Below are positions 2,613 through 62,000 of a stretch of 62,000 bases of DNA, piece after piece (positions within the stretch are counted from its first letter, which is position 1; each line of letters opens with the position of its first letter). A program made the position numbers and the translations under genes. This stretch comes from Octopus vulgaris (taxonomy: Eukaryota): contig OX597815.1 in the NCBI GenBank assembly GCA_951406725.2, positions 35,608,001 through 35,670,000 of the forward strand. The letters are read 5' to 3'. Under the pieces are notes generated by a model. The model made no database searches and had not been told where the DNA came from. It saw nothing but the letters and a program-made list of their open reading frames with translations.

Positions 2613-3130
2613 GTGAAGGGAAGAAGTGGAGCCGAACGAAGATTCTACAAAATTCCTTTTTATTATTTTCTACACATGTTTCAAAGGCTGCAAATTCCCA
2701 AATTCGGATTGTATAAGGAGACCATTCTGCAGCTTTCTCTTCAAGAAAATCCAGGTGCCATTTTTACCATGGGCTCCTAGGGAGCGTTTTGTTCGAAAAG
2801 CTTGCTGCGCATTTGTTTTGAGATTTTAAATTCCTGGATTTTCCTGAAGAGAATGCTGCAGAATGGTCTCCTTATTCAATCCGAATTTGGGAATTTGCAG
2901 CCTTTGAAACATGTGTAGAAAATAATAAAAAGGAATTTTGTAGAATCTTCGTTCGGCTCCATTTCTTCCCTTCACTAAATATATAAAACTTCAATTATCC
3001 GCGCTAAAGCACGGGGGCGAAACCCCATGGTCGTAACCTCAACCGTGTCTTTTCTGGTGTGATTTTTGCTACACAGGTATCGGTTAAATTTTGAATAATC
3101 CATAACAAGATAATTCATTTATCCATTTCA
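2609..3130. repeat. Asymmetric fold-back element (~150-bp inverted arms, ~75-bp spacer, ~145-bp unpaired tail) inside (TA)n
   Basis: tttagtgaagggaag...aaaatccagg (about 2609-2755) is the near-exact reverse complement of cctggatttt...cccttcactaaa (about 2833-2980); TA tracts lie on both sides. Confidence 0.9.
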
Positions 3131-4344: not shown

Positions 4345-4898
4345 CGAATTTCTGGGTATGGAGGCCAGTCGATTAGATCGATCCAGTATGCAACTGGTAC
4401 TTAATTTATCGACCCCGAAAGGATGAAAAGCAAAGTCGATCTCGGCGGGATTTGAACTCAGAACGTAAAGACAGACGAAATACCTATTCCTTTACTACCC
4501 ACAAGGGGCTACACACAGAGGGGACAAACAAGGACAGACAAACGGATTAAGTCGATTACATCAACCCCAGTGCGTAGCTGGTACTTAATTTAACGACCCC
4601 GAAAGGATGAAAAGCAAAGTCGATCTCGGCGGAATTTGAACTCAGAACGTAAAGACAGACGAAATACCTATTTCTTTATTACCCACAAGGGGCTAAACAC
4701 AGAGGGGACAAACAAGGACAGACATAGGTATTAAGTCAATAACATCGACCCCGGTGCGTAACTGGTACTTAATTTATCGACCCCGAAAGGATGAAAGGCA
4801 AAGTCGACCTCGGCGGAATTTGAACTCACAACGTAACGCAGACAAAATACCGCTAAGCATTTCGCCCGGCGTGCTAAAGTGTCTGCCAGCTCGCTGCT
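4345..4898 (-). mobile_element. SINE family B head plus three head-to-tail body units (period 184 bp)
   Basis: The junction gacgaaatacc|tattYcttta occurs at 4484 and 4668; there is a single 5' head (gcatttcgcccggcgtgc...gccagctcg) near 4856-4895. Confidence 0.9.
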
Positions 4899-9869: not shown

Positions 9870-12372
9870 AACTTTAAATTCCGTCAGTACGCAGTGAGTT
9901 TATGAGTGGGATAAATAATTTGTCCTGTGATGCAAGCTGGAGGTTTTTCAAAGAAAGAGTGTACGAGATTTGTAGTAACATTCTTGGCTTTGTTGTAAAA
10001 AAAAAAACACCAAGTTTGGTTTGACGATAATGATGAAGTTAATCTTATCTTAGAGGAGAAGCGAAAGGCAGTGGCTACATATTTCAAGGCTGTAAAAGCA
10101 ACAGTGCAGAGGAATTGGTGGTGTGATAGATGCGATAAAATCCAAGAAGCCTCAAATGCTAACAATTCTAAACTTTTTTACTCTCTTGAAAAATGTTTAT
10201 GGACCAGTTTCATCAAAGGTTGTGCCACTTCGGTGCAAGGATGGCACAGAATTATTAACAAATCCTAAAGATATTGTTGGGAGGTGGAAAGAACATTTTG
10301 ATGAGTTGCTCAATAGACCCACTGAAGTTGATCTCTCTTTTCTTGATAATATACCCGAGAGACCAATAAAACGTCTTATAGCAGAAGTTCCAAACCTGGC
10401 TGAAATAAAAGCAGCAATTAGGAAATTGAACAATGGAAAAGCCCCTGGTATGGATGGACTAGATGCAGTGATATATAAATATGGTTGTGATCATCTTTGT
10501 GCAATGCTGACGGATGTGATTCCTCCGGATTGGCGTGATGCAACTATTGAGATACTATATAAATCTAAAGGTGGAAAGGATGTTTGTGATAATTATCGCG
10601 GCACCTGTCTGTTACCTGTTGCTGGAAAGGTCCTTTGTAGGTTAATGCTGGATAGATTGCTTCTGCACATTGCTGATGAGGTTCTACCAGAATCGCAATG
10701 TGGGTTTAGGGATAGTAGTAGTACTATTGATATGATATTTTCGGCTAGACACTTGCAAGAGAAGTGCATCGAACAGGATATGGACTAATACCTGGTTTTC
10801 ATTGACCTAACAAAAGCGTTTGACTCTATCAATAGAATTGCACTTTGGGAGACCCTAAAAAGCTAGGATGCCCTGAAAAATTTGTGAGAATTTCATAACA
10901 AGATGGAAGTGAGAGTTAATGTTAGGGGTACCTTATCAGATCCAATTTCTGTAGAAAATGTTCTAAAGCAAGGTGATATTCCTGCTCCTGCACTGTTTGC
11001 TATACATTTCGCAATAGTCTATCAAATAGCTTTTAAAGATTGCCTTGAAGGGGTCTACATAAGATATAGGACAACAGGAAAACTGTTTAATCTCAAAAGA
11101 CTCTGTGCCAAAACGAAAGTTCTGCATTCTCACCATGTTGAGTTTCTGTGTGCAGATAATTGTGACCTGTTGGCACATTCTCAGAAAAATATGCAGCACA
11201 AAGTGAATGCGATTTCTGCAGCATGTGCAGTATTGGGTCTAACAATCAATCTAAAAAAAACTGTTGTAATGTACCAGCCCGCTCCCTCCAAGATGTATGT
11301 GGAACCTTTTATAACTGTGAATGGTCAAAGGTTGGAGACTGTACCTAGATTTAGTTATTTAGGAAGTACCTGGAGCACTGCTGGTCTTGATGATGAAATT
11401 TCATACAGAATCAGCAGGGCTAGTAATGCTTTTCGTAGGATTGATAGGCGTCTGTAGAAACAACATAATATATCTTCACGGATTAAAGTGAAGGTATGTA
11501 ACACATGCGTCTTCCCATCAATGTTATATGGAAGTGAGGCAAGGGTTGTTTATTGTAGGCAGGTAAGGTAATTGGAACGATTTCATCAATACTGTCTGAG
11601 AAAAATTTTGGGGATAAACTGAAAAATGTCCATTAATAATGTGGAGGTGCTTGAGAGGAGTGGCAGTAGAAGTATAGAGTCAATGATTTTGCAAAGACGT
11701 TTGAGGTGGGGGGAGAACATTCGGTAAGGATGAGTGATGAGCGACTGCCCAAGCAGCTATTGTATGGTGAGCTGGAAGATCGTAGGTGACCAGCGCATAA
11801 GCCTAAACTAAGGTTTAAGGATTGCGTTAAAATTGCTCTAATAAAGAGAGGAATTGCAGCTTGTAATTGGGAGAGGGAGGCACAAGACCGTGATGGATGG
11901 GGGAAGATAGTGCATGATAGTTGTTCAAGGTTTGAGAGGGAGAGAGTGAAGTATGAGAGAATAAGGAGGGGGCTTAGAAGGGGGGAACCTGTGGAAAGAG
12001 AGAGAGTTTTGCTTTTTATATGTGTGGCTTGTGGGCGGAGGTGTTTGAGTCGTGCAGGCCTGGTGAGCCACGAAAATTCTTATAGAAATCGACCCATGAT
12101 AAACAATGATGTGGCTATTAAAATTCATAGCAAAACGTGTCTAAAATGTGGAAAGGTGTGCCTCTCAGTTGGAGGTTTAAAAAGATATGTTAAGAGAGTG
12201 CATATGGTGGCACCTGTTACTCCTGCCAGCCAGCACAGTTGTCTAGTATGTAATAAAATGTGTAAAACACTGGCTGGGCTTAAAAGTCATATAAGAGCAT
12301 CACATGGCAACAATCATGAATCATGTCAGTAAGTCTTCTTGGCAATGGTTTTTCTCGTGCAACGAGGATGCA
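9870..12372 (+). mobile_element. 5'-truncated RTE-clade LINE (BovB-like) with disrupted RT ORF2
   Basis: KKHQVWFDDND, GKAPGMDG, NYRGTCLLPVAGKVL, LPESQCGFR, TIDMIFSAR.LQEKC, FIDLTKAFDS, LKQGDIPAP, FLCADNCDL (decayed YADD), FSYLGS and KQLLYGEL; several frameshifts and stops. Confidence 0.95.
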
Positions 12373-37365: not shown

Positions 37366-37658
37366 GCAAAAAATAAATACATGGTGAAGGATTCGTGGTC
37401 TTGTTCGAATACATGCCATAGAATGAACTCCATTGTATACATCTAAAAACCGATTAGCGGTGGTAAACCAGGTGGCATATTGGGATATTCATTGACATAA
37501 CACTGGGTTGCCTCTCGCACATACACTTCACCATCTGATGATAGATGTTTTATCATATATATATTTTGGGAACAATGGCATCATCGATTATATATTTTCT
37601 CTGGTTCACTTACATTTCGGAGAATAAGAGTGAGATGGGAATGTATGTTTCGACTCTA

Positions 37659-38296
37659 GGTCAACACAAATCGAGAAGACTCTATGGCAACACTAATCGA
37701 GAAGACTCTATGGCAATACTAATCGAGAAGACTCTAGGGCAACACTAATCGAGAAGACTCTATGGCAACACTAATCGAGAAGACTCTAGGGCAACACTAA
37801 TAGAGGACACTCTAGGGCAACACTAATCGAAAATACTCTAGGGCAACACTAATAGAGAAAACTCTTGGGCAACACTAATCGAGAAGACTCTAGGGCAACA
37901 CTAACAGAGAAGACTCGAGGGCAACACTAATCGAGAAGACTCTAGGCCAACACTAATCGAGAAGACTCCAGGGCAACACTAATCGAGAAGACTCTATGGC
38001 AACACTAATCGAGAAGACTCTAGGGCAACACTAATAGAGGAGACTCTAGGGCAACACTAATCGAAAAGACTCTAGGGCAACACTAATCGAAAATACTCTA
38101 GGGCAACACTAATAGAGAAGACTCTAGGGCAACACTAATCGAAAAGACTCTAGGGCAACACTAATCGAGAAGACTCTAGGGCCACACTAATCGAGAAGAC
38201 TCCAGGGCATCACTAATCGAGAAGACTCTAGGGCAACACTAATCGAAAAGACTCTTGGGCAACACTAATCGAGAAGACTCCAGGGTAACACTAATC
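37659..38296. repeat. 26-bp minisatellite, 24.5 units (GGGCAACACTAATCGAGAAGACTCTA)
   Basis: Units counted at exact 26-bp phase with no indels. Confidence 0.98.
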
Positions 38297-39013
38297 AAAG
38301 GTTTTCTAATCATGACTACTCCGGTTTTTAATTATTTATTTATTTATTTATTTATTGTTGTCTTTACAGTCGTATCTAAGACTACATGAATAATGTCCGA
38401 ATCTTATTTAAAGTTGGGATTTGAAGGAGATTTGGCTACTATTTCTAATAGATCGAACAACCACCTTAGAGGCTTCCTCGTTGGCTCTGGTGAATAATAC
38501 TTGCGTGGTGCTCTCCCAGCATGTGATAGGAAGGCTGGTATTGAGAGTAGGGTTAGCGGGGGCTGCGAGTGCATTGCTTGCACCTGGAGCATTGACGCGG
38601 AATTGGTAATGCAGATTGACTACTCAGAGCATCCTGATTAAGTTTAAAAATACACTCATACGGAGAAAAGATGACGAGGAGGAAGAAGCGAAAGAAGGGA
38701 ATAAGGAGGAGAACAACAAAGAGGAATAGGAGGGTAGTGCTGATATATTTCGCTCACCAATTTTGGTATACATTTCACCATCGAATAATGGATGTTTTAT
38801 CATATATATATTTTTGGAACTATGGCATCATTGATTAGATATTTCCTCTGGTTCACTGACATTTCGGAGAATAAGAGTGATATGGGAGTGTGTGTGGATT
38901 GACCCAACAATTTACTGAAATTTCAATGATGATGATAAAGATGATGAAGATAATAATGGTGACGGCGACGTCGCCGGCGACGATGACGATTATAATGATG
39001 ATGATAGCGTGGA

Positions 39014-39500
39014 GGGCGGAGAGCTGGCAGAAACGTTAGCACGCCGGGCGAAATGCGTAGTCGTATTTCGTCTGTCGTTACGTTGTGAGTTCAAATTCCG
39101 CCGAGGTCGACTTTGCCTTTCATCCTTTCGGGGTCGATAAATTAAGTACCAGTTACGCACTGGGGTCGATGTAATTGACTTAATACCTATGTCTGTCTTT
39201 GTTTGTCCCCTCTATGTTTAGCCCCTTGTGGGTAATAAAGAAACATATAATGATGATGATAGCGTGGAGGGCGGCGAGCTGGCAGAAACATTAGCAGGCC
39301 AGGCGAAATGCGTAGCCGTATTTCGTCTGTCGTTACGTTGTGAGTTCAAATTCCGCCGAGGTCGACTTTGCCTTTCATTCTTTCGGCGTCGATAAATTAA
39401 GCACCAGTTACGCACTGGGGTCGATGTAATTGACTTAATACCTATGTCTGTCTTTGTTTGTCCCCTCTATGTTTAGCCCCTTGTGGGTAATAAGGAAAGA
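39014..39500 (+). mobile_element. Two tandem full-length SINE family B copies
   Basis: Each is preceded by the same 24-bp tataatgatgatgatagcgtggag. Confidence 0.95.
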
Positions 39501-45015: not shown

Positions 45016-46272
45016 ACAGATCCTCTCATAAGTTCAGTTCGATTTTATCTTTTTTTTAATTGAATAAAATTTAATAGAATTTTAGAATATCTAATGGAAT
45101 TTAAAATTATTTTTATGCATTTGTGTACATTTAAACTAATTAAAAATTATTTTACAGAATAACAGAATTAAAATTTCTTTGATTAAAACCCTTTCTAACA
45201 TGGAAGTATCCAAAGAGCATTTGAGGCACATAATGCTTTATGAGTACAATAAAAGGAAACTCTGCAGCCGAGCAACTCGAAATATACACTCAGATTATGG
45301 GAAAGAATGCTTGAATCAAAGATGGTTTGCAAAATTCAGAAGTGGAGATTTCAACCTCAAAGATGAAGATCCAACAGGACTTCCCGTTGAGTTTGATGAT
45401 AAGCTCCTTAAGGTATTACTTGAAGAAAATCCTGCATTATCAGTTGAAGAATTTGGCAATAAAGCTTAGTTCAAACCACACAACTGTTCATCGTCATCTT
45501 CAACAACTTGGAAAGGTTCCTAAACTTGGAAAATGGGTGCCTCATGAATTGTCCGAAAACAACCGCAAATCCCGACTTGACATCTGCTCTTCTTTCCATT
45601 CCCGCGAACTCATTTCACCCTTTTTGGATAGACTTGTGACTGGTGACGAAAAGTGGATCTTCCATCGAAATGTTAAACGTTGTAAACAGTGGCTTGGTAA
45701 AAAGGAAAAAGTTCAACCACAACCGAGAAGGGAACTTTATGGGGAAAAGGTTCTTCTCTCTATCCGGTGGGATTGTAAAGGAGTAACTCACTTTGAATTG
45801 TTACCACCTAATGCAACAATCAAAGCCCAAGTCTACTGTCAGCAATTAGAGTATTTCAACCAAACTTTGAAGGAAAAGAGACCTGCTTTAGTGAATCGGA
45901 ATGGAGTGATGTTTCATGAGAACAATGCGCAACCCACACACAGAAGGTCGAAGAACTTGGGAAAAAATTCCTCATCCACCTTATTCTCCCGACCTTGCTC
46001 CTTCAGACTACCATTTGTTTCGTAGTTTACAGAATCATTTAGGGGACATAACTTTCGCAAGCCAGGAGGAGGTCGAAACTGACATTTCAGAGTTGTTCGC
46101 TTAGAAACCAAAAGAGTTTTACATTGATTGGCTTAAAAAGCTTGTAAGTAGATGGAAGGAAGTCATAGATAATCAGGGAAAGTACATTGATGATTAAATT
46201 TCGATTAAGTATAACATTTGACCACTTGTTTTCTTTATTCAAAATTCGGACAGAACTTATGGGATGACCTGA
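45016..46272 (+). mobile_element. Full-length mariner (1257 bp, TA TSD) with disrupted transposase
   Basis: 27-bp TIRs (left one decayed); WVPHEL, VTGDEKW, FHENNA and YSPDLAPSDYHLF motifs. Confidence 0.95.
45200..46197 (+). pseudogene. Mariner transposase pseudogene
   Basis: ATG at 45200 (MEVSKEHLRHIML) to TAA at 46197; at least two frameshifts. Confidence 0.9.
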
Positions 46273-48083: not shown

Positions 48084-48527
48084 ATTATTATGTAAAAGGT
48101 GGCGAGCTGATAGAATCGTTAGCACGCAGGGCGAAATGCTTTGCGGCACTTGGTCTGTCTGCACGTTCTGAGTTCAAATTACGCCGAAATCGACTTTACC
48201 TTTCATCCTTTCGGGGTCGATAAAATAAGTACCAGTTACGCACTGATTCGATGTAATCGTCTTAATCCCTTCCCCCAAATTTGAGGCCTTGTGCTTCCAG
48301 AAGAAATAATTATTATTATTATTAAGATAGTCAGGTGGCAGAACTGGTAGCACGCCGGGTAAAATGCTTAGCGGCATTTCGTCCGTTTTTGCGTTCTCAG
48401 TTGAAATTCCACCAAAGTCGACTTTACCTTTCATGCTTTCGGAGTCGATAAAATAAGTACCAGTTGAGCACTAGTTTCGATGTAATCGACTTAGCTCCAC
48501 CCCCACCTTGTGTCTTTAATAGAAAAG

Positions 48528-48584
<57 letters not shown>

Positions 48585-49329: not shown

Positions 49330-49937
49330 TGTGTGGCACAAGGCCAGCAATTTCGATGGCGGAGTTAAGACGATTACTTCGACTCCAATGTTCAACTGGT
49401 ACTTATGTTATCGACCTTGAAAGAATGAACGGCAAAGTCGACCTCGGCGGAATTTGAACTCGGAACGTAAAGATGGACGAAATACCTATTTCTTTATTAC
49501 CCACAAGGGGCTAAACACAGAGGGGACAAACAAGGACAGACACACGGATTAAGCCGATTACATCGACTCCAGTGCGTAACTGGTACTTATTTAATCGACC
49601 CCCGAAAGGACGAAAGGCAAAGTCGACCTCGGCGGAATTTGAACTCACAACATAACGGCAAACGAAATACCTATTTCTTTACTACCCACAAGGGGCTAAA
49701 CACAGACGGGACAAACAAGGACAGACAAACGGATTAAGTCGATTACATCGACCCCAGTGCGTAACTAGTACTTATTTAATCGACCCCGAAATGATGAAAG
49801 GCAAAGTCGACCTCGGCGGAATTTGAACTCAGAACGTAACAGCAGACGAAATACCGCAAAGCATTTCGCCCGGCGTGCTAACGTTCTCACAACGTAACGG
49901 CAGACGAAATACCGCTAAGCATTTCGCCCGGTGTGAA
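49330..49937 (-). mobile_element. Nested/tandem SINE family B cluster (period 185 bp)
   Basis: Junctions at 49486 and 49671; duplicated head at 49885-49937. Confidence 0.92.
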
Positions 49938-51533: not shown

Positions 51534-52079
51534 TTCTGATGGAAATGAATTTCATTTCCATAATTAGCATACAAAACTAAATCAATACTCCAAATTTGAA
51601 ATCAATTGGAACAAAATTGAAGGAATTGAAAAGTGAAAGCCAAACAGAGAAGATTCGAAATGGATGATTTTGTTGCACACTTCATGAGTAATACTAGCAT
51701 TTCAAAGCAGAAAGAGCATTCACCGAAGGCGATCGCTAATCCTTCCACGAAGGCTAAACCTTTCACTACAACGGACAACGACAACATTGAGAAAGAGAAA
51801 ATTGTTGCGTGAAGTTCCCATGAAGATCGTGCCACATGACTTTGAGAGAAAAATTAAGGTTAATTGTTTTGCCGTAAAAATGTGCAGACAGAAAGAGCAC
51901 TGAGTCATAGTCAGTCGGAAGCTTTCGAAATATGATAAAAACTTTTCTGAAAATGTGAGAGAACAAATGGTGGAACGTGGGTGGATGGCTACGACGTTGA
52001 GACAAAATGACAGTCGGTCATCGACATTAGTTGGGTCATCATCGCTGTGGGGAAAGGAAAAGCTTGTCAACACAACAGC

Positions 52080-52256
52080 CGTTACCTCCACCGCTACCAC
52101 CATAATCACAGCCACCACCAGCAGCTCCACCGACATCATCACATCGCCACCAGTTCCACCACCATCACCATCACCACCACCACCACCACCACCACCACCA
52201 CTCGAATCACTATTAACATTATCACCAGCACCACCATCGATACCATTAAAATCAAC

Positions 52257-52290
<34 letters not shown>

Positions 52291-52640
52291 ACAGTGCCGC
52301 CACTACCACCACCATCACCACCACCACCACCACCCGAATCACAATTAACATTATCACCAGCACCACCATCGATACCATTAAAATCAACACCACCACCACC
52401 ACCACCACCATCATGATCATCAACAGTGCCGCCACTACCACCGTCATCACCAGCAAGACGAAGCATCGCAGAAGCAACTCCACAGGCTGGCATTAAATTA
52501 CTCACAGGCACGCTTCAGCACTACAAGCAGCGACACCACCAACACCACATCCTACGGTACTGCTACCAGCTCCACCAACACTATCGCCACCATGAAACAC
52601 CATAAAACACCACCACGCCTGTCACCACTTACTTGTCGGT
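52080..52640. repeat. (CAC/CAT)-rich low-complexity tract with a 132-bp tandem duplication
   Basis: cgaatcac.attaacattatcaccagc... starts at 52203 and at 52335. Confidence 0.9.
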
Positions 52641-56288: not shown

Positions 56289-56342
<54 letters not shown>

Positions 56343-57041
56343 GCATACCTCGTTTTACGTAACCCCGATTTACGAAACCTCAACTTTACGAATTGTTGAC
56401 GAGAAACAAAAACAAATGGTTAGTTACCATGGCAACGAGCGTCACTTCCGGCCTGGCAGCACTTGTTATCTCCAGCGATCGTCTGCAACTACTTTTTGGA
56501 TTTGAAGTGTGTCAGTGCCTGCCCGACTGGCTTCGCGCTAGCCTGCATTTTATCTTCCTTCATTCTATTCACTTCTTTATTTTTATTTTTATTTTTTACG
56601 CATTTTATTCTTTTGACTACCCTTGTGGTGGCTTCGAAAAGAAAGAATTCTGGAATGCAAAGCAAATATAAGAAGAAACGTAAAACAATTAATCTAGAAA
56701 TATAATACGGATTGATTAAACAACACGAAAAAGGTGCAACTTTTAAAGATTTATCAAAAAATTTGATATGGCTCCTTCATCTGTTTGTACCATCTTCAAG
56801 CCAAAAGAAAATTATTTCGATAAAGTTAAAGGATGTCATTCTCTAAATTCAACTTGGTTACGAAGAAGAGATAATGAAAGTTTAGTCTCACGCACAGAAA
56901 AACTTTTGACAGCTTGGATTAACGATCAAATTCATAGACGTCATATGCCACTTAGTCAGGCAATAATTGGTAGTAAAGCAATTTCACTTTTTAACTTGCT
57001 TAAGGATAAATCAGATGGATTAAATGAAGCCTTTTTAACAA

Positions 57042-58891
57042 GCAATGGTTGGTTCGATGGTTTCAAAAAAACAAGCAAATCTACACTTTTGCAATGGTTG
57101 GTTTGATGGTTTCAAAAAAACAAGCAAATCTACACTTTTGCAATGGTTGGTTTGATGGTTTCAAAAAAACAAGCAAATCTACACTTTTGCAATGGTTGGT
57201 TTGATGGTTTCAAAAAAACAAGCAAATCTACACTTTTGCAATGGTTGGTTTGATGGTTTCAAAAAAACAAGCAAATCTACACTTTTGCAATGGTTGGTTT
57301 GATGGTTTCAAAAAAACAAGCAAATCTACACTTTTGCAATGGTTGGTTTGATGGTTTCAAAAAAACAAGCAAATCTACACTTTTGCAATGGTTGGTTTGA
57401 TGGTTTCAAAAAAACAAGCAAATCTACACTTTTGCAATGGTTGGTTTGATGGTTTCAAAAAAACAAGCAAATCTACACTTTTGCAATGGTTGGTTTGATG
57501 GTTTCAAAAAAACAAGCAAATCTACACTTTTGCAATGGTTGGTTTGATGGTTTCAAAAAACAAGCAAATCTACACTTTTGCAATGGTTGGTTTGATGGTT
57601 TCAAAAAAACAAGCAAATCTACACTTTTGCAATGGTTGGTTCGATGGTTTCAAAAAACAAGCAAATCTACACTTTTGCAATGGTTGGTTTGATGGTTTCA
57701 AAAAAACAAGCAAATCTACACTTTTGCAATGGTTGGTTCGATGGTTTCAAAAAAACAAGCAAATCTACACTTTTGCAATGGTTGGTTTGATGGTTTCAAA
57801 AAAACAAGCAAATCTACACTTTTGCAATGGTTGGTTCGATGGTTTCAAAAAAACAAGCAAATCTACACTTTTGCAATGGTTGGTTCGATGGTTTCAAAAA
57901 ACAAGCAAATCTACACTTTTGCAATGGTTGGTTCGATGGTTTCAAAAAAACAAGCAAATCTACACTTTTGCAATGGTTGGTTTGATGGTTTCAAAAAAAC
58001 AAGCAAATCTACACTTTTGCAATGGTTGGTTCGATGGTTTCAAAAAAACAAGCAAATCTACACTTTTGCAATGGTTGGTTTGATGGTTTCAAAAAAACAA
58101 GCAAATCTACACTTTTGCAATGGTTGGTTCGATGGTTTCAAAAAAACAAGCAAATCTACACTTTTGCAATGGTTGGTTTGATGGTTTCAAAAAAACAAGC
58201 AAATCTACACTTTTGCAATGGTTGGTTCGATGGTTTCAAAAAAACAAGCAAATCTACACTTTTGCAATGGTTGGTTCGATGGTTTCAAAAAAACAAGCAA
58301 ATCTACACTTTTGCAATGGTTGGTTCGATGGTTTCAAAAAAACAAGCAAATCTACACTTTTGCAATGGTTGGTTTGATGGTTTCAAAAAAACAAGCAAAT
58401 CTACACTTTTGCAATGGTTGGTTTGATGGTTTCAAAAAAACAAGCAAATCTACACTTTTGCAATGGTTGGTTTGATGGTTTCAAAAAAACAAGCAAATCT
58501 ACACTTTTGCAATGGTTGGTTTGATGGTTTCAAAAAAACAAGCAAATCTACACTTTTGCAATGGTTGGTTTGATGGTTTCAAAAAAACAAGCAAATCTAC
58601 ACTTTGCAATGGTTGGTTTGATGGTTTCAAAAAAACAAGCAAATCTACACTTTTGCAATGGTTGGTTTGATGGTTTCAAAAAAACAAGCAAATCTACACT
58701 TTTGCAATGGTTGGTTTGATGGTTTCAAAAAAACAAGCAAATCTACACTTTTGCAATGGTTGGTTCGATGGTTTCAAAAAACAAGCAAATCTACACTTTT
58801 GCAATGGTTGGTTTGATGGTTTCAAAAAAACAAGCAAATCTACACTTTTGCAATGGTTGGTTTGATGGTTTCAAAAAAACAAGCAAATCTA
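57042..58891. repeat. 49-bp tandem array (~38 units) inside the Tigger coding sequence
   Basis: Unit gcaatggttggttYgatggtttcaaaaaaacaagcaaatctacactttt; variation limited to C/T, A6/A7 and one T deletion. Confidence 0.98.
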
Positions 58892-59842
58892 AACAATGTA
58901 AAGATCCAAGGAGAATCGTCTAGCGGAGATCAAAAAGCCGCAGAAACAATTCCTCGCCAATTAGAAGATTTGGTTGAAGAAGAAGGCTGTCTCAAATATT
59001 TAATGTGGATAAAACGGGTCCATTTTGGAAACGAATGTCTTCAAGGATTTTTATTGCGAGAGAAAAATCTTCAAGGCCAGGATTCAAAGCTGCAAAAAAT
59101 GGGATAACATTGCTTCTGGGAGGAAATTTTGAAGAGGACTGCAAACTCAAGCTCATACTTAATTATCGATCTGAAAACACCCGTACTTTAGAAGGAATAG
59201 ACAAGACGAAACTTCCTATAATCTGGAAGCATAACAAAACAGTTTGGATGGCAGGAACTCTATTTGAAGATTGGTTTTCTTATCACTTTGTTCCCAAAAT
59301 GGAAAAAAATATTGTAAGGATAAATAATTCCTTTCAAGATTCTTTTGATAATGGATAGTGCTCCCAACCATGCTGCATTTTTAAAGCATCACCATCAAAA
59401 TATTAATGTTTTTTTTTTATACCTCCTAATACAACATCTTTATTGCAGCCTATGAATCAAGGAGTCATTTCATCGTTTAAATATTACTAATTCCTTTTCA
59501 CCTTTGAAAGACTCATCGGAGTGACTTATAAAGAAAATGGTTCTACGATTCAAGAATTTTGGAAGCGCTTCAACATCCTTGATGCAATAAAATTGATAAA
59601 GAAAGCATTGGATAAGATCGCCGTAAAGAACATGAAAGGAAATTGGAAAAATCTCTGTCCCAAATTAATTGACAATTTTGAAGGATTTGATAATCTTCAT
59701 GAAGGTCTTCAAAAAGAAACTGACACGCAAAGGAATCGAACTTAGAAATTTCACCTGAAGATATAAAAGAAGCTCTTTATGCTCACAGTGATGAAATTAC
59801 AAATGAAGAATTGCTAGAAATGAAGAAGTTTAAACGTGACAG

Positions 59843-59984
59843 AGAAGAAGAAGAAGAAGAAGAAGAAGAAGAAGAAGAAGAAGAAGAAGAAGAAGAAGAA
59901 GAAGAAGAAGAAGAAGAAGAAGAAGAAGAAGAAGAAGAAGAAGAAGAAGAAGAAGAAGAAGAAGAAGAAGAAGAAGAAGAAGAA
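59843..59984. repeat. Pure (GAA)n, about 47 units
   Basis: Directly visible, within the Tigger acidic C-terminal region. Confidence 0.98.
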
Positions 59985-60485
59985 TGCCGGAGTGCATGAA
60001 ATCTTTGAGCAGCAAGGTGCCGATTTTGAAAGAAGCTCAACTGTTACTGCAAATTTAATGAGAGGTCATGCTTGTTATCGTGATATCTACTGTGAAATGA
60101 TGAAGAAATCTTTTCAACAAACAACTTTAGATAAGCTTTTAACGAAGAAAACTAATTCGGACCAAACAACAAAACAAAAAGAAACTCAACAAATGGAATT
60201 GACATGCTCTCAAGAGGCCCCAGTGACGTTAGACCCAATGGATACGAATTAAATTTCATGGGTTGAATATTTTGTTTTATAGGTTTTTCTATTTTTCATT
60301 CTGTAGTTTGTGATTATTTATATCTTAACCTTTTTTTTTTCAATTTTAGAAAGTTTAAGAATCAACTTCTTTAGTGGGAACTAATTAAAGGTATATTCAT
60401 TGTTTTCCATGGACGATAATACCCCAACAATACGAATTTTTGACTTTACGAATCTAGTCAGGAACGACTATATGTATATATGTAC

Positions 60486-60518
<33 letters not shown>

Positions 60519-60520
60519 CA

Positions 60521-62000
60521 CTAGCAGAGATACCCGGCGTTGCCCGGTTACATTCAATAGAAGAATTAGACTTTTCTGTTATATATATATATATGGATAC
60601 ACAAACACATACACACACAAATATATGTATATTAATATAAATACATGAAAGTACATGAATTTTGTTAAAAAAAAGGGGATCTTGTATATACCTCCTGGCT
60701 GTTGAGATTATAACACCTCGTTGTAAACAATGTTCCTTGTTTTTCCTTGTGGAGCATATACAAGAAGGTTTCTTTTGGTTCCTACTCTTGAGCAGCCAAC
60801 ATACAGTTGCCTATGCGAGAAGCAGGGCTCTTCCAAGAGAAGACCAGCTACAGAGAGGGTTTGACCCTGAGATTTGTTAATGGACATGGCAAAGCTGACA
60901 CGAAGGGGGAATTGCAGTCTTCTGAATGTAAATGGAATTTCTGCTCCTGATGGAGTAAGAGGAAATCTTGGAATAAAGACGTCATCACCTTTTCCACATC
61001 CAGAAAGAATGATCGCCTCGATAACGTGTGATATCATTTTCTTTATCACCAGTCGTGTTCCATTGCAAAGTCTTGGTGGTTCCAGATTGCGGAGTAGCAT
61101 TACAGGAGTTCCAACTTTAAGTGGTAATATGTGTGGAGGTAGTCGAAGAGGCTCCAGTGAATTGAGAAATTCAGGAGGATAGTTCACAACTTCATTTATA
61201 TCTGGAATTGTATCAACAGACTTGTAAGTGTGTCTAGTGCCGGGAAGAGAATGCATTAGCTGTTGATTAATTTTGTTAACAGCGACGTTTTTTGGAGCTA
61301 ATATGGCTCTTTCACACCGCCAATTGTGATTTTGGTAGTTTTGTGTGAAGTTGGGAAAGACTTTGTTTTTGAGGTCATCTACAGAATGAACAACAGAGGA
61401 AAATGACCACATGTTCCATTTGTCCTGCAGCATCGAGAGGCATCTTGCCTTCACCAAGTGTCAAAATGTCGTGTGCAAACTTTGTGGACATTTTGTCGCC
61501 TTGTAGCTGAGCTCTCATGTTAGTGGTGAGACTAAAGATTGCAACATGATGACATAGGGTAGAGGACTTTAGGCATGCTTGAACTTCATCAGCTCTAGTG
61601 CCTTTCGGAATGATAGGAAGAGTTTGCCTGAAATCACCTGACAACAGAAGCGTTACACCTCCCATTGGAGCCTGACAGTCACGGATGTCTTTCAGGGTTC
61701 TATCTAATGCTTCCAAAGCTCCCTTGTGAGCCATAGTGCACTCAGCCAGACAATTACATAACACATTTTAAGTACTTGTCCCTGATCTGAGCTTTTGTTG
61801 ATGTTGCATGAGAGGGAGTTTAAAAGTTGAGTGTGCTGTCCTGCCACCGGGTAACAAAGTAGCTGCAATGCCAGAGGAGGCTACAGCTACTGCAATGTCC
61901 TGATGCTACCTAACTTCTGCAAGGAGAAGCTTTGTAATAAATGTTTTTTCTGTCCCTCCAGGAGCACCGAGGAAGAAGATTGGTCCCTCGCGTTGGCGTA
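60521..62000 (-). mobile_element. Helitron 3' portion with PIF1-family helicase pseudogene; runs off the window
   Basis: LGAPGGTEKT (decayed Walker A), ASSGIAATLLPGGRTAHSTFKLP, SGDFRQTLP, LRNLEPPRLCNGTRL and FAMSINKSQGQT; 3' hairpin ccgggcaacgccggg and CTAG|T at 60521-60547. Confidence 0.95.

What the first reader, a model, noticed from the sequence alone, without database searches (positions are those of the whole stretch)
57042..58891. New satellite born inside a Tigger transposase DNA-binding domain
The ORF enters at ...FLTSNGWFDGFKK and resumes 1.85 kb later at QANLNNVKIQGE, so the array is an amplification of 42 bp coding the CENP-B-type HTH helix plus a 7-bp filler (cactttt). About 38 units are nearly identical while the surrounding transposon is riddled with lesions, so the expansion is far younger than the element. 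C variants cluster in the middle (about 57640-58330), showing stepwise spread. The 48-bp (A6) variant preserves frame; the dominant 49-bp one does not. TE-derived satellites are known, but a single-locus array with both junctions intact in a coding exon is a clean snapshot of satellite origin.
Basis: partly seen in the sequence, partly recalled or inferred. Interest (0 to 1): 0.75.

Follow-up and report, generated by a model that had tools for sequence, protein, structure and literature searches.

The report
Young minisatellite inside dead Tigger transposon
A 49-base piece of a long-dead Tigger-type jumping gene has been copied head-to-tail 38 times at one spot in this 2.8-Gb genome; transposon-born minisatellites like this are common, but a two-copy version of the same locus survives in very close relatives, so the steps of its birth can be read.

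Summary
The array is real: window 57042-58891, period 49, 37.9 copies, 98% matches. It sits in the HTH_Tnp_Tc5 coding remnant of one decayed pogo/Tigger copy (about 56340-60465), which has stops, frameshifts and a lost right terminus.

In the 2.8-Gb genome the tandem form exists only here. Seventeen other family copies that were aligned each carry one unit.

The anatomy needs correcting. The family sequence reads CTACAC-AATG, so the unit is 45 nt of transposon plus a 4-nt TTTT filler, not 42+7. C at unit position 14 is ancestral and T is a CpG-to-TpG derivative.

All units share three copy-private changes. The copy is 8.2% from the family majority, while the units differ by 0.9%. The amplification therefore post-dates most of the decay.

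Public-run contigs show array words at about 15-25 times flank depth in organism A. In organism C one single-copy-depth contig runs left flank, two units, right flank. Organism B also looks low-copy.

Best reading: a neutral, copy-number-polymorphic minisatellite (VNTR). It began as one duplication with a repair filler and grew by unequal exchange or slippage, including 98-bp dimers.

It is a new member of a known kind and is not a satellite. Interest is modest.

The parts
56340..60465 (+). One decayed copy of a low-copy pogo/Tigger-type DNA transposon, host of the array. The right terminus is missing.
   Evidence: Pfam HTH_Tnp_Tc5 and DDE_1. About 25-35 other copies in the genome at 74-87% identity. 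Other copies continue about 29 nt beyond 60465 before their flanking TA.
56340..56375 (+). Left terminal inverted repeat. It reads CAAGCATACCTCG... here; the family reads TA|CAGGCATACCTCG...
   Evidence: Alignment of the left ends of six other copies with their flanks.
56768..57079 (+). Remnant ORF encoding the HTH_Tnp_Tc5 DNA-binding domain. Its last ~13 codons lie in the first array unit.
   Evidence: Pfam PF03221, E 7.1e-10, residues 44-101 on profile positions 5-58 of 66. Translation.
56985..56991 (+). CACTTTT 7-mer, 57 nt upstream of the array. Candidate cis template for the filler (CAC microhomology plus TTTT).
   Evidence: Only 3 plus-strand copies of this 7-mer in 60 kb outside the array; one is here. 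Inference only.
57042..58891 (+). The 49-bp minisatellite: 38 units, each 45 nt of transposon (GCAATGG...CTACAC) plus TTTT.
   Evidence: Ancestral sequence from 17 family copies.
57042..57090 (+). First unit (type B). It keeps the ancestral C14 and is continuous with the left flank. The first TTTT filler is at 57087-57090.
57629..58361 (+). Central block (units 13-27), rich in the ancestral C14 variant. C/T alternate with period 2, which suggests amplification of a 98-bp dimer.
   Evidence: Scan p = 0.005. Same-state fraction 0.77 at lag 2 against 0.29 at lag 1; alternation p = 0.04.
58850..58894 (+). Last unit, continuous with the right flank. It carries a private C-to-A change (CTAAAC, where the other units and the family have CTACAC).
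   Evidence: The same A is present in the right-flank contigs of runs X2 and X4.
59005..59358 (+). DDE_1 catalytic-domain remnant, N-terminal part. A 7-nt deletion and frameshift lie just upstream, near 58990.
   Evidence: Pfam PF03184, E 2.5e-11. Alignment and translation.
59521..59745 (+). DDE_1 remnant, C-terminal part, separated from the first part by stops and frameshifts.
   Evidence: Pfam E 9e-4, below the curated cutoff. Three-frame translation.
59843..59984 (+). (AGA)47 microsatellite in the acidic tail of the transposase remnant. This is a family-wide variable feature and is not part of the 49-bp array.
   Evidence: TRF. Other copies carry (GAA) runs of up to 46 units.

Best explanation
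This is a locus-specific, selectively neutral minisatellite (VNTR) born inside one fossil pogo/Tigger transposon copy, in two steps.

Step 1 (inferred). After the copy had already decayed, a single repair event duplicated 45 nt of its HTH_Tnp_Tc5 coding remnant head-to-tail and left a 4-nt TTTT filler at the joint. Error-prone end joining of a staggered or resected break is the likeliest cause. The filler may have been copied from the CACTTTT site 57 nt upstream, using CAC as microhomology. This gave a 2-unit allele.

Step 2 (pattern shown, process inferred). The two 49-nt units then allowed misaligned pairing. Unequal sister-chromatid or homologue exchange, or replication slippage, expanded the array to about 38 units in the lineage of this assembly. 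Part of the growth was in 98-bp (two-unit) steps.

The C/T variation is decay of the unit's only CpG. Exchange between the first unit (C14, C43) and the last unit (T14, A43) yields exactly the dominant interior type (T14, C43).

The array codes for nothing and has no detectable function. Its copy number differs between near-identical genomes.
For: Array and variants.

Host element is a dead Tigger/pogo copy:
- Pfam HTH_Tnp_Tc5 E 7e-10 and DDE_1 E 2.5e-11
- TA|CAGGCATACCTCG terminus and a lost right end
- stops and frameshifts throughout

Not a family feature. All 17 aligned paralogues have one unit and read CTACAC-AATG. Left and right matches overlap by only 42-45 nt in the other copies.

Single locus. 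The tandem form and 36 exact junction 20-mers occur only here in 2.8 Gb.

Amplification after decay:
- All units share three copy-private changes: GATCG to GATGG (0 of 17 other copies), A6 to A7 (0 of 17), CGAGC to CAAGC (4 of 17).
- The copy is 8.2% from the family majority (24 of 291 sites), against 0.9% mean pairwise difference among units, all at one CpG.

Read evidence:
- Run X1 (organism A): contigs of array words at depth 760-830, against 31-54 for exact-matching flank contigs.
- Run X4 (organism C): one 399-nt contig at depth 5.6, the single-copy depth in that run. It lies on 56894-57132 with one mismatch and then continues for 160 nt as this locus's own right flank (AACAATGTAAAGATCC...). 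That is left flank, unit, TTTT, unit, right flank.
- Run X2 (organism B): one contig holds a unit tail with TTTT, the last unit and the right flank. There is no high-depth cycle.
- Flanks of A, B and C match the window with 0-1 mismatches.

Internal structure: clustering p = 0.005 and period-2 alternation.

Initiation was not simple slippage. The flanking CAATG direct repeat would predict a 43-nt unit with no filler (sequence).

Literature: TE-derived minisatellites are common, mostly of 2 units, and expand locally (PMC3389668). Templated inserts copied from the immediate vicinity mark polymerase-theta end joining (PMC7368036).
Against: - All read evidence comes from Logan contigs (k-mer assemblies). 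None of it is raw long reads. Depth ratios are only a rough copy number, and the exact figure of 38 rests on the assembly.
- The polarity 2 to 38 is not proven. The 2-unit alleles could be contractions of a longer array.
- I could not see whether position 14 of the second unit in X4 is T.
- The filler is only 4 nt. That is below the 5 nt at which PMC7368036 judged template mapping reliable. The CACTTTT match has a chance probability of about 0.005-0.03.
- Organism labels are coded, so I cannot say whether A, B and C are species or populations.
- Absence of function is an inference from context; no RNA data could be laid.
Confidence: 0.8

Rival explanations
1. The long array is ancestral, and the 2-unit alleles in organisms B and C are secondary contractions by the same unequal-exchange process. 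The locus would then show minisatellite turnover and not a preserved birth stage.
For: Unequal exchange contracts as readily as it expands. Any exchange between the first and last units yields exactly the [first][last] 2-unit allele seen in X4. X2 and X4 share a flank variant (56667 G) that the window and X1 lack, so the 2-unit state might have arisen once in their common ancestor.
Against: Most TE-derived tandem repeats have only two units, and longer arrays are rarer and later (PMC3389668). The units are 99% identical and the interior types are simple recombinants of the two edge units. That fits recent growth from two units.
Confidence: 0.2
2. The copy number in the assembly is an artefact or is inflated, and the true locus has only a few units.
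For: No raw long reads could be laid. Read laying cannot lay stretches in which the unit's words occur more than 12 times. X1's depth ratio of about 15-25 is at or below what 38 homozygous copies would give.
Against: Array-specific words are about 15-25 times deeper than the flanks in X1. The assembly has 2.8 Gb in 227 contigs, so I infer it was built from long reads, which would span a 1.85-kb array. The array carries ordered, non-random variants, which collapse or expansion artefacts rarely produce.
Confidence: 0.05
3. The unit-to-unit junction was templated in trans from an unrelated repeat on contig C20 that natively contains the exact 20-mer AATCTACAC-TTTT-GCAATGG. In other words, a template switch between loci created the first duplication.
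For: The exact 20-mer occurs at C20:23613226 and C20:23939866, with a 1-mismatch version at C20:23681582. The reversed-pattern control found 0. The flanks there are unrelated to the transposon. My composition-based expectation for one exact match in the genome is about 0.01.
Against: The three C20 sites are copies of one sequence, so they count as one coincidence. Homology stops exactly at the 20-mer. Templated inserts are usually copied from the immediate vicinity (PMC7368036), and a cis candidate exists at 56985. I have no independent support for a trans switch.
Confidence: 0.08
4. The array is a functional element, for example a small-RNA source, a protein-binding platform or a nascent centromeric or heterochromatic satellite.
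For: None direct. Arrays of TE-derived units can seed satellites (PMC4079207, PMC6947457).
Against: It is a single 1.85-kb locus in a TE-rich stretch containing reverse transcriptase, mariner and Helitron-type PIF1 remnants. It shows no unusual secondary structure: z = -1.07 and +0.36. Copy number ranges from 2 to about 38 between near-identical genomes. No run on record as RNA holds it, which is weak evidence.
Confidence: 0.03

Closest known systems
TE-derived minisatellites formed after insertion within individual TE copies (Ahmed and Liang 2012, PMC3389668)
   Same: Part of one TE copy is tandemly repeated at its own locus. Initiation is a one-off duplication, most often seen as 2 units. 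Expansion is by local duplication of units, and the array is only partly present in related genomes. The initiation is not explained by the two classical models.
   Different: The host is a DNA transposon of the pogo/Tigger group in a non-human genome, and the piece comes from the transposase DNA-binding-domain coding region. At 38 units it is unusually long for the class. Two-unit and expanded forms both occur among near-identical genomes.
Haber-Louis model of minisatellite origin (slippage or unequal exchange between 5-10-nt direct repeats; summarised in PMC6947457)
   Same: A 5-nt direct repeat (CAATG) does flank the duplicated segment. The later expansion phase is as in the model.
   Different: The model predicts a 43-nt unit with a seamless joint. 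The observed joint has about 6 extra nt relative to that prediction, or a 4-nt TTTT filler relative to the maximal TE match. So initiation was not simple slippage.
Small tandem duplications with junction inserts from error-prone break repair (polymerase-theta end joining, PMC7368036; patch-mediated duplications in rice and paired-nick repair, cited there as Vaughn and Bennetzen 2014 and Schiml et al. 2016)
   Same: It is a head-to-tail duplication with a short non-duplicated insert at the joint. A matching sequence (CACTTTT) lies in the immediate vicinity.
   Different: The duplications reported in PMC7368036 are 1 kb to 1 Mb. Here the segment is 45 nt and the insert only 4 nt, too short for confident template assignment. 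This is a resemblance of scar, and the pathway is not demonstrated.
Satellite DNAs built from TE-internal tandem repeats (e.g. Tetris in Drosophila virilis, PMC4079207; DTC84 MITE in Donax trunculus, PMC3879986)
   Same: Tandem units share sequence with a DNA transposon.
   Different: In those cases the repeats are part of the mobile element's own structure, are spread by transposition and reach many loci or long arrays. Here the repeat is absent from the family, immobile (the right terminus is lost) and confined to one 1.85-kb locus.

Membership tests
pogo/Tigger DNA transposon (host element) | DDE_1 (PF03184) transposase catalytic domain | tested here: met
   Window 59005-59358, E 2.5e-11, 43.9 bits against cutoff 22. 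A second piece at 59521-59745, E 9e-4, is below the cutoff. The domain is broken by stops and frameshifts.
pogo/Tigger DNA transposon (host element) | CENP-B-type HTH_Tnp_Tc5 (PF03221) DNA-binding domain upstream of the DDE domain | tested here: met
   Window 56768-57079, E 7.1e-10, 39.2 bits against cutoff 22.2.
pogo/Tigger DNA transposon (host element) | Terminal inverted repeats beginning CAGG... and TA target-site duplication | tested here: met
   Six other copies start A|CAGGCATACCTCG... (TA in four of them, CA in two), and right ends finish ...GGTCTGCCT before TA-rich flanks. The reverse complement of the right end resembles the left end. In the window copy the left end reads CAAGC and the right end is missing. 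The likeness to human Tigger1 termini is from my memory and was not tested.
pogo/Tigger DNA transposon (host element) | N-terminal first HTH (CENP-B_N / psq type) | not tested
   The N-terminal remnant (about 56652-56760) is split by a stop and a frameshift into pieces too short to scan separately.
Minisatellite / VNTR | Unit of about 10-100 nt in a head-to-tail array of about 0.5-30 kb at a discrete locus | tested here: met
   49-nt unit, 1,850 nt, one locus in 2.8 Gb.
Minisatellite / VNTR | Copy number varies between individuals or close lineages | tested here: met
   Array words at about 15-25 times flank depth in X1. A 2-unit contig at single-copy depth in X4, and X2 looks low-copy. Flanks differ by 0-1 mismatches. 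The evidence is contig-level, with no raw reads.
Satellite DNA | Long arrays (tens of kb to Mb), high genomic abundance, usually many loci or heterochromatic blocks | tested here: not met
   Only 1.85 kb at a single locus. Elsewhere in the genome there are only single 42-45-nt units inside other TE copies.
TE-borne internal tandem repeat (spread by transposition) | The array, or at least 2 units, is present in other copies or the consensus of the TE family | tested here: not met
   All 17 aligned copies have one unit with the ancestral CTACAC-AATG continuity.
Haber-Louis slippage origin | Unit equals the segment between short direct repeats plus one repeat, with a seamless joint and no filler | tested here: not met
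   A flanking CAATG repeat exists, but the joint reads CTACAC-TTTT-GCAATGG, which is 6 nt more than predicted (sequence).

The most novel reading that the evidence does not exclude
Both stages of minisatellite birth may coexist among near-identical genomes. One is a 2-unit proto-allele that still carries the repair scar of the founding duplication: a TTTT filler, possibly templated from CACTTTT 57 nt upstream, which is a polymerase-theta-type signature. The other is an allele expanded to about 38 units. If the 2-unit allele is ancestral, this locus would be a natural system for measuring how and how fast a minisatellite starts and grows. It would also document a repair-scar route of initiation for some of the 94% of TE-derived tandem repeats whose origin the classical models do not explain (PMC3389668).
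Probability: 0.35. Interest if true: 0.45.

Novelty: new member of a known kind. Interest (0 to 1): 0.27.

Why it matters
On its own this is ordinary repeat turnover in junk DNA. Arrays born inside single TE copies make up about a quarter of human minisatellites and satellites (PMC3389668).

Its modest value is as a clean worked example:
- The ancestral sequence can be recovered from about 30 paralogues.
- Both edges of the array are intact.
- The founding joint carries a short filler that rules out simple slippage.
- A two-unit form and an expanded form both occur in genomes whose flanks are almost identical.

That combination lets the poorly understood initiation step be separated from the expansion step. 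It also gives a ready-made, highly variable marker for the species complex.

It does not seed a satellite and shows no sign of function.

Tried and rejected
1. Array as part of the family consensus: rejected. All 17 aligned paralogues have one unit.

2. Dispersed satellite: rejected. The extra junction 20-mer hits on C20 and C5 are unrelated sequences that share only the 20-mer.

3. 42+7 anatomy: replaced by 45+4. It survives only if the C-to-A change at unit position 43 predates the duplication.

4. Simple slippage between the flanking CAATG repeats: rejected, because the joint is 6 nt too long.

5. Hairpin-driven slippage: no support. DNA folds of a two-unit stretch give z = -1.07 and +0.36.

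I laid the left flank plus five units instead, which used the single call.

7. All listed runs are Logan contigs, and none of the runs that hold the stretch is on record as RNA. Expression and small RNAs were therefore not tested.

I had intended to use it to pull other alleles through the junction-crossing ORFs.

9. The search of earlier findings was not open on three tries, so no earlier findings were used.

10. The first attempt to map the element ends by BLAST was swamped by TA microsatellites. I redid it by direct extraction.

11. I did not run the large protein searches. Pfam already classifies the remnants, and full-length relatives would fall outside the length window for such short pieces.

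12. Organism names are coded in the run table and I did not try to identify the species. ARAGORN found no tRNA genes in the window.
Full report
**1. Observation**

Tandem Repeats Finder reports one array at window 57042-58891: period 49, 37.9 copies, 98% matches, no indels, score 3581. The raw sequence shows it plainly.

Cutting at each GCAATGG gives 38 units:
- 23 of type A (T at unit position 14, A7 run)
- 9 of type B (C14, A7), including the very first unit
- 3 of type C (C14, A6; 48 nt)
- 1 of type D (T14, A6; 48 nt)
- 1 of type E (TTT in place of TTTT; 48 nt)
- a last unit that runs into the right flank and reads CTAAAC where all the others read CTACAC

In order the units read B A9 D A C A B A B C B A B A B A B B B A4 E A3 C A F.

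**2. Host element**

The flanks belong to one copy of a pogo/Tigger-type DNA transposon.
- Pfam finds HTH_Tnp_Tc5 in 56768-57079 (E 7.1e-10).
- Pfam finds DDE_1 in 59005-59358 (E 2.5e-11), plus a weaker DDE_1 tail in 59521-59745.
- The window's own genome is 2.8 Gb in 227 contigs, and the window is C2:35608001-35670000. It holds about 25-35 other copies at 74-87% identity.
- Their left ends read TA|CAGGCATACCTCG..., where the window has CAAGC, starting at 56340.
- Their right ends continue about 29 nt beyond window 60465 before a TA-rich flank. So this copy has lost its right terminus.

Three-frame translation shows an in-frame stop and a frameshift in the N-terminal HTH. It also shows a 7-nt deletion near 58990, and several stops and frameshifts inside and after the DDE domain.

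The copy is a fossil, so 'coding exon' overstates it. The wider window is TE-rich: reverse-transcriptase remnants at 10.1-11.5 kb, a mariner Transposase_1 at 45.3-46.0 kb, and a Helitron-type PIF1 helicase at 60.7-61.8 kb on the minus strand.

**3. Uniqueness**

A 245-nt array query finds tandem matches only at this locus. Elsewhere there are only isolated 42-45-nt matches at 89-93% identity inside other copies of the family.

In the other copies, the matches to the left and right halves of the element overlap by just one unit.

An alignment of 17 paralogues across the site shows a single unit in every one. The array is therefore not part of the family and was not spread by transposition.

**4. 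Corrected anatomy**

The family majority reads ...GCAATGGTTGGTTCGATCGTTTCAAAAAACGAGCAAATCTACAC-AATGTGAAG....

So the unit is 45 nt of transposon plus a 4-nt TTTT filler. The right-hand junction differs by one later C-to-A change.

The 42+7 partition would hold only if that C-to-A change preceded the duplication. In that case the filler's first three bases would have to recreate the ancestral sequence by chance.

C at unit position 14 is the family state and sits in the unit's only CpG. T is the derived state. The central 'C cluster' is therefore retained or re-amplified ancestral sequence and is not a new variant spreading.

**5. Relative age**

Every unit carries three changes private to this copy:
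- GATCG to GATGG (0 of 17 other copies)
- A6 to A7 (0 of 17)
- CGAGC to CAAGC (4 of 17)

Around the junction the copy differs from the family majority at 24 of 291 sites, or 8.2%; the family range is 5-13%. The units differ from one another by 0.9% on average, all at the one CpG.

The amplification therefore post-dates most of the copy's decay. Because arrays homogenise, 0.9% is not a clock.

**6. Internal structure**

Ten of the 12 C14 units lie in units 13-27 (57629-58361); scan-statistic permutation p = 0.005. Inside that block the states alternate: the same-state fraction is 0.77 at lag 2 against 0.29 at lag 1, and the alternation p is 0.04.

This is the footprint of growth in two-unit (98-nt) steps. 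The unit has no unusual hairpin potential on either strand.

**7. Independent reads**

Twenty public runs under four coded organism labels hold parts of the stretch. All are kept as Logan contigs, and none of the holders is on record as RNA.

I laid 56600-57286, which is the left flank plus five units.

- **X1 (organism A).** Contigs of array words have depth 760-830. Exact-matching flank contigs have depth 31-54. That is about 15-25-fold amplification.
- **X4 (organism C).** One 399-nt contig has depth 5.6, the single-copy depth of that run. It lies on 56894-57132 with one mismatch and then continues for 160 nt as AACAATGTAAAGATCC..., which is this locus's own right flank including its private A. 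So it runs left flank, unit, TTTT, unit, right flank. The first unit (C14, C43) and the last unit (T14, A43) share no 31-mer, so such a contig is linear only if there are exactly two units. Its depth excludes hidden amplification.
- **X2 (organism B).** One contig holds a unit tail with TTTT, the last unit and the right flank. There is no high-depth cycle, so it too is low-copy.
- **X11 (organism D, 90-95% alike).** Contigs run CTACAC straight into AATGTGAAG, with no duplication. I cannot tell whether this is the orthologue or a paralogue.

The flanks of A, B and C differ from the window by 0-1 mismatches. X2 and X4 share one flank variant (56667 G).

So the founding duplication with its filler exists as a 2-unit allele, and the expansion is polymorphic among near-identical genomes.

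**8. Mechanism**

*Shown.* There is a head-to-tail duplication with a 4-nt non-duplicated joint. The interior unit types are simple recombinants of the two edge units. Growth was partly in dimers, and copy number varies.

*Inferred: initiation.* It was not simple slippage. The 5-nt CAATG repeat that flanks the segment would give a seamless 43-nt unit, and the real joint is 6 nt longer.

A duplication with a short insert is the scar expected from error-prone end joining of a staggered or resected break. The 7-mer CACTTTT is rare here, with 3 plus-strand copies in 60 kb outside the array. One lies at 56985, 57 nt upstream. So the 3' end ...CTACAC could have paired through CAC and copied TTTT.

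Templated inserts copied from the immediate vicinity are described as a hallmark of polymerase-theta end joining (PMC7368036). But that paper judged only inserts of 5 nt or more to be mappable, and its tandem duplications were 1 kb to 1 Mb. This is a lead, and I put it at roughly 0.3.

*Inferred: expansion.* Unequal exchange between a misaligned first unit (C14, C43) and last unit (T14, A43) gives [C14,C43][T14,C43][T14,A43]. That is exactly the observed edge units plus the dominant interior type. Repeated exchange or slippage does the rest.

*Polarity.* The 2-to-38 direction is likelier than contraction (about 0.6-0.7) but is not proven.

**9. An unexplained coincidence**

The exact junction 20-mer also occurs at C20:23613226 and C20:23939866. 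A 1-mismatch version lies at C20:23681582 and another at C5:119929952. The reversed-pattern control found none.

The C20 sites are three copies of an unrelated repeat that shares only these 20 nt. From base composition I expect about 0.01 exact matches genome-wide.

It may be chance. It may instead be a trans template for the joint, with 9 nt and 7 nt of homology either side of TTTT. I give the trans-template idea about 0.08.

**10. Comparison with what is known**

Ahmed and Liang (PMC3389668) found that at least 23% of human minisatellites and satellites derive from TEs. Most have two units, they expand locally over time, and the classical models explain the initiation of only 6%. The review PMC6947457 lists many TE-to-tandem-repeat conversions and the Haber-Louis and Wong-Choo models.

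This locus fits that class. It meets the minisatellite/VNTR definition: 49-nt unit, 1.85 kb, one locus, variable copy number. It fails the satellite definition, having no long arrays, no abundance and only one locus.

It also differs from TE-borne internal repeats such as Tetris (PMC4079207) or DTC84 (PMC3879986), because the family lacks the repeat.

The same window holds another minisatellite (26 nt x 24.8 copies, 90% matches, at 37652-38296). So such arrays are not rare in this genome.

**11. Verdict**

It is a TE-derived, locus-specific, young or actively homogenised array. It is a neutral minisatellite in a pseudogene and not a new satellite, and it belongs to a well-known class.

The added value found here is the 2-unit allele in close relatives and the filler-bearing founding joint. 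Interest 0.27; novelty: new member of a known kind.

**12. Limits**

- There were no raw reads, so the exact copy number, the right junction in other runs and expression are untested.
- The search of earlier findings never opened.
- Organism names are coded and I did not try to decode them.

Noticed in passing
G000:C20:23613226-23613245 (-), C20:23939866-23939885 (+), C20:23681582-23681601 (+, 1 mismatch); loci L051-L053 around position 3001-3020: Three copies of an unrelated repeat on contig C20 contain the exact array junction 20-mer (AATCTACAC-TTTT-GCAATGG) and share nothing else with the transposon. About 0.01 exact matches are expected by chance, so this is either coincidence or a possible trans template.
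   Followed up: partly
window 37652-38296: A second minisatellite: period 26, 24.8 copies, 90% matches. Origin not examined.
   Followed up: no
window 4392-4851, 38991-39498, 48120-48549, 49360-49855: Four short tandem arrangements (2-2.7 copies) of about 184-255-nt units with similar consensus sequences. They include a ...TTCAAATTCCGCCGAGGTCGA... motif that looks tRNA/SINE-like to me. ARAGORN calls no tRNA in the window.
   Followed up: partly
window 59843-59984; loci L032-L040: (AGA)47 in the acidic tail of the transposase remnant. Other copies of the family carry (GAA) runs of 4 to 46 units, or none. So this microsatellite is a family-wide, length-variable feature.
   Followed up: yes
window 56292-56338 and 60469-60518; flanks of L014, L016, L018, L024, L044, L046: Many copies of this Tigger family, including the window's, sit directly against (TA)n microsatellites on one or both sides. 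This may reflect TA-target insertion into TA runs, or TA-run growth from the target-site duplication.
   Followed up: no
window 60708-61764 (-): Remnant of a Helitron-type PIF1 helicase (PF05970, E 8.6e-26; Pif1_2B, E 3.7e-16) immediately downstream of the Tigger copy.
   Followed up: partly
window 45327-46022 (+) and 10123-11454 (+): A mariner-type Transposase_1 remnant (E 1e-21), and reverse-transcriptase (RVT_1) fragments just below the Pfam cutoff. The window is a TE-rich stretch.
   Followed up: no
window 52156-52452 / ORF 51720-52511 (-): A CCA-rich region with a 132-nt unit repeated 2.1 times (94% matches), inside a 263-aa ORF on the minus strand that has no Pfam match.
   Followed up: no
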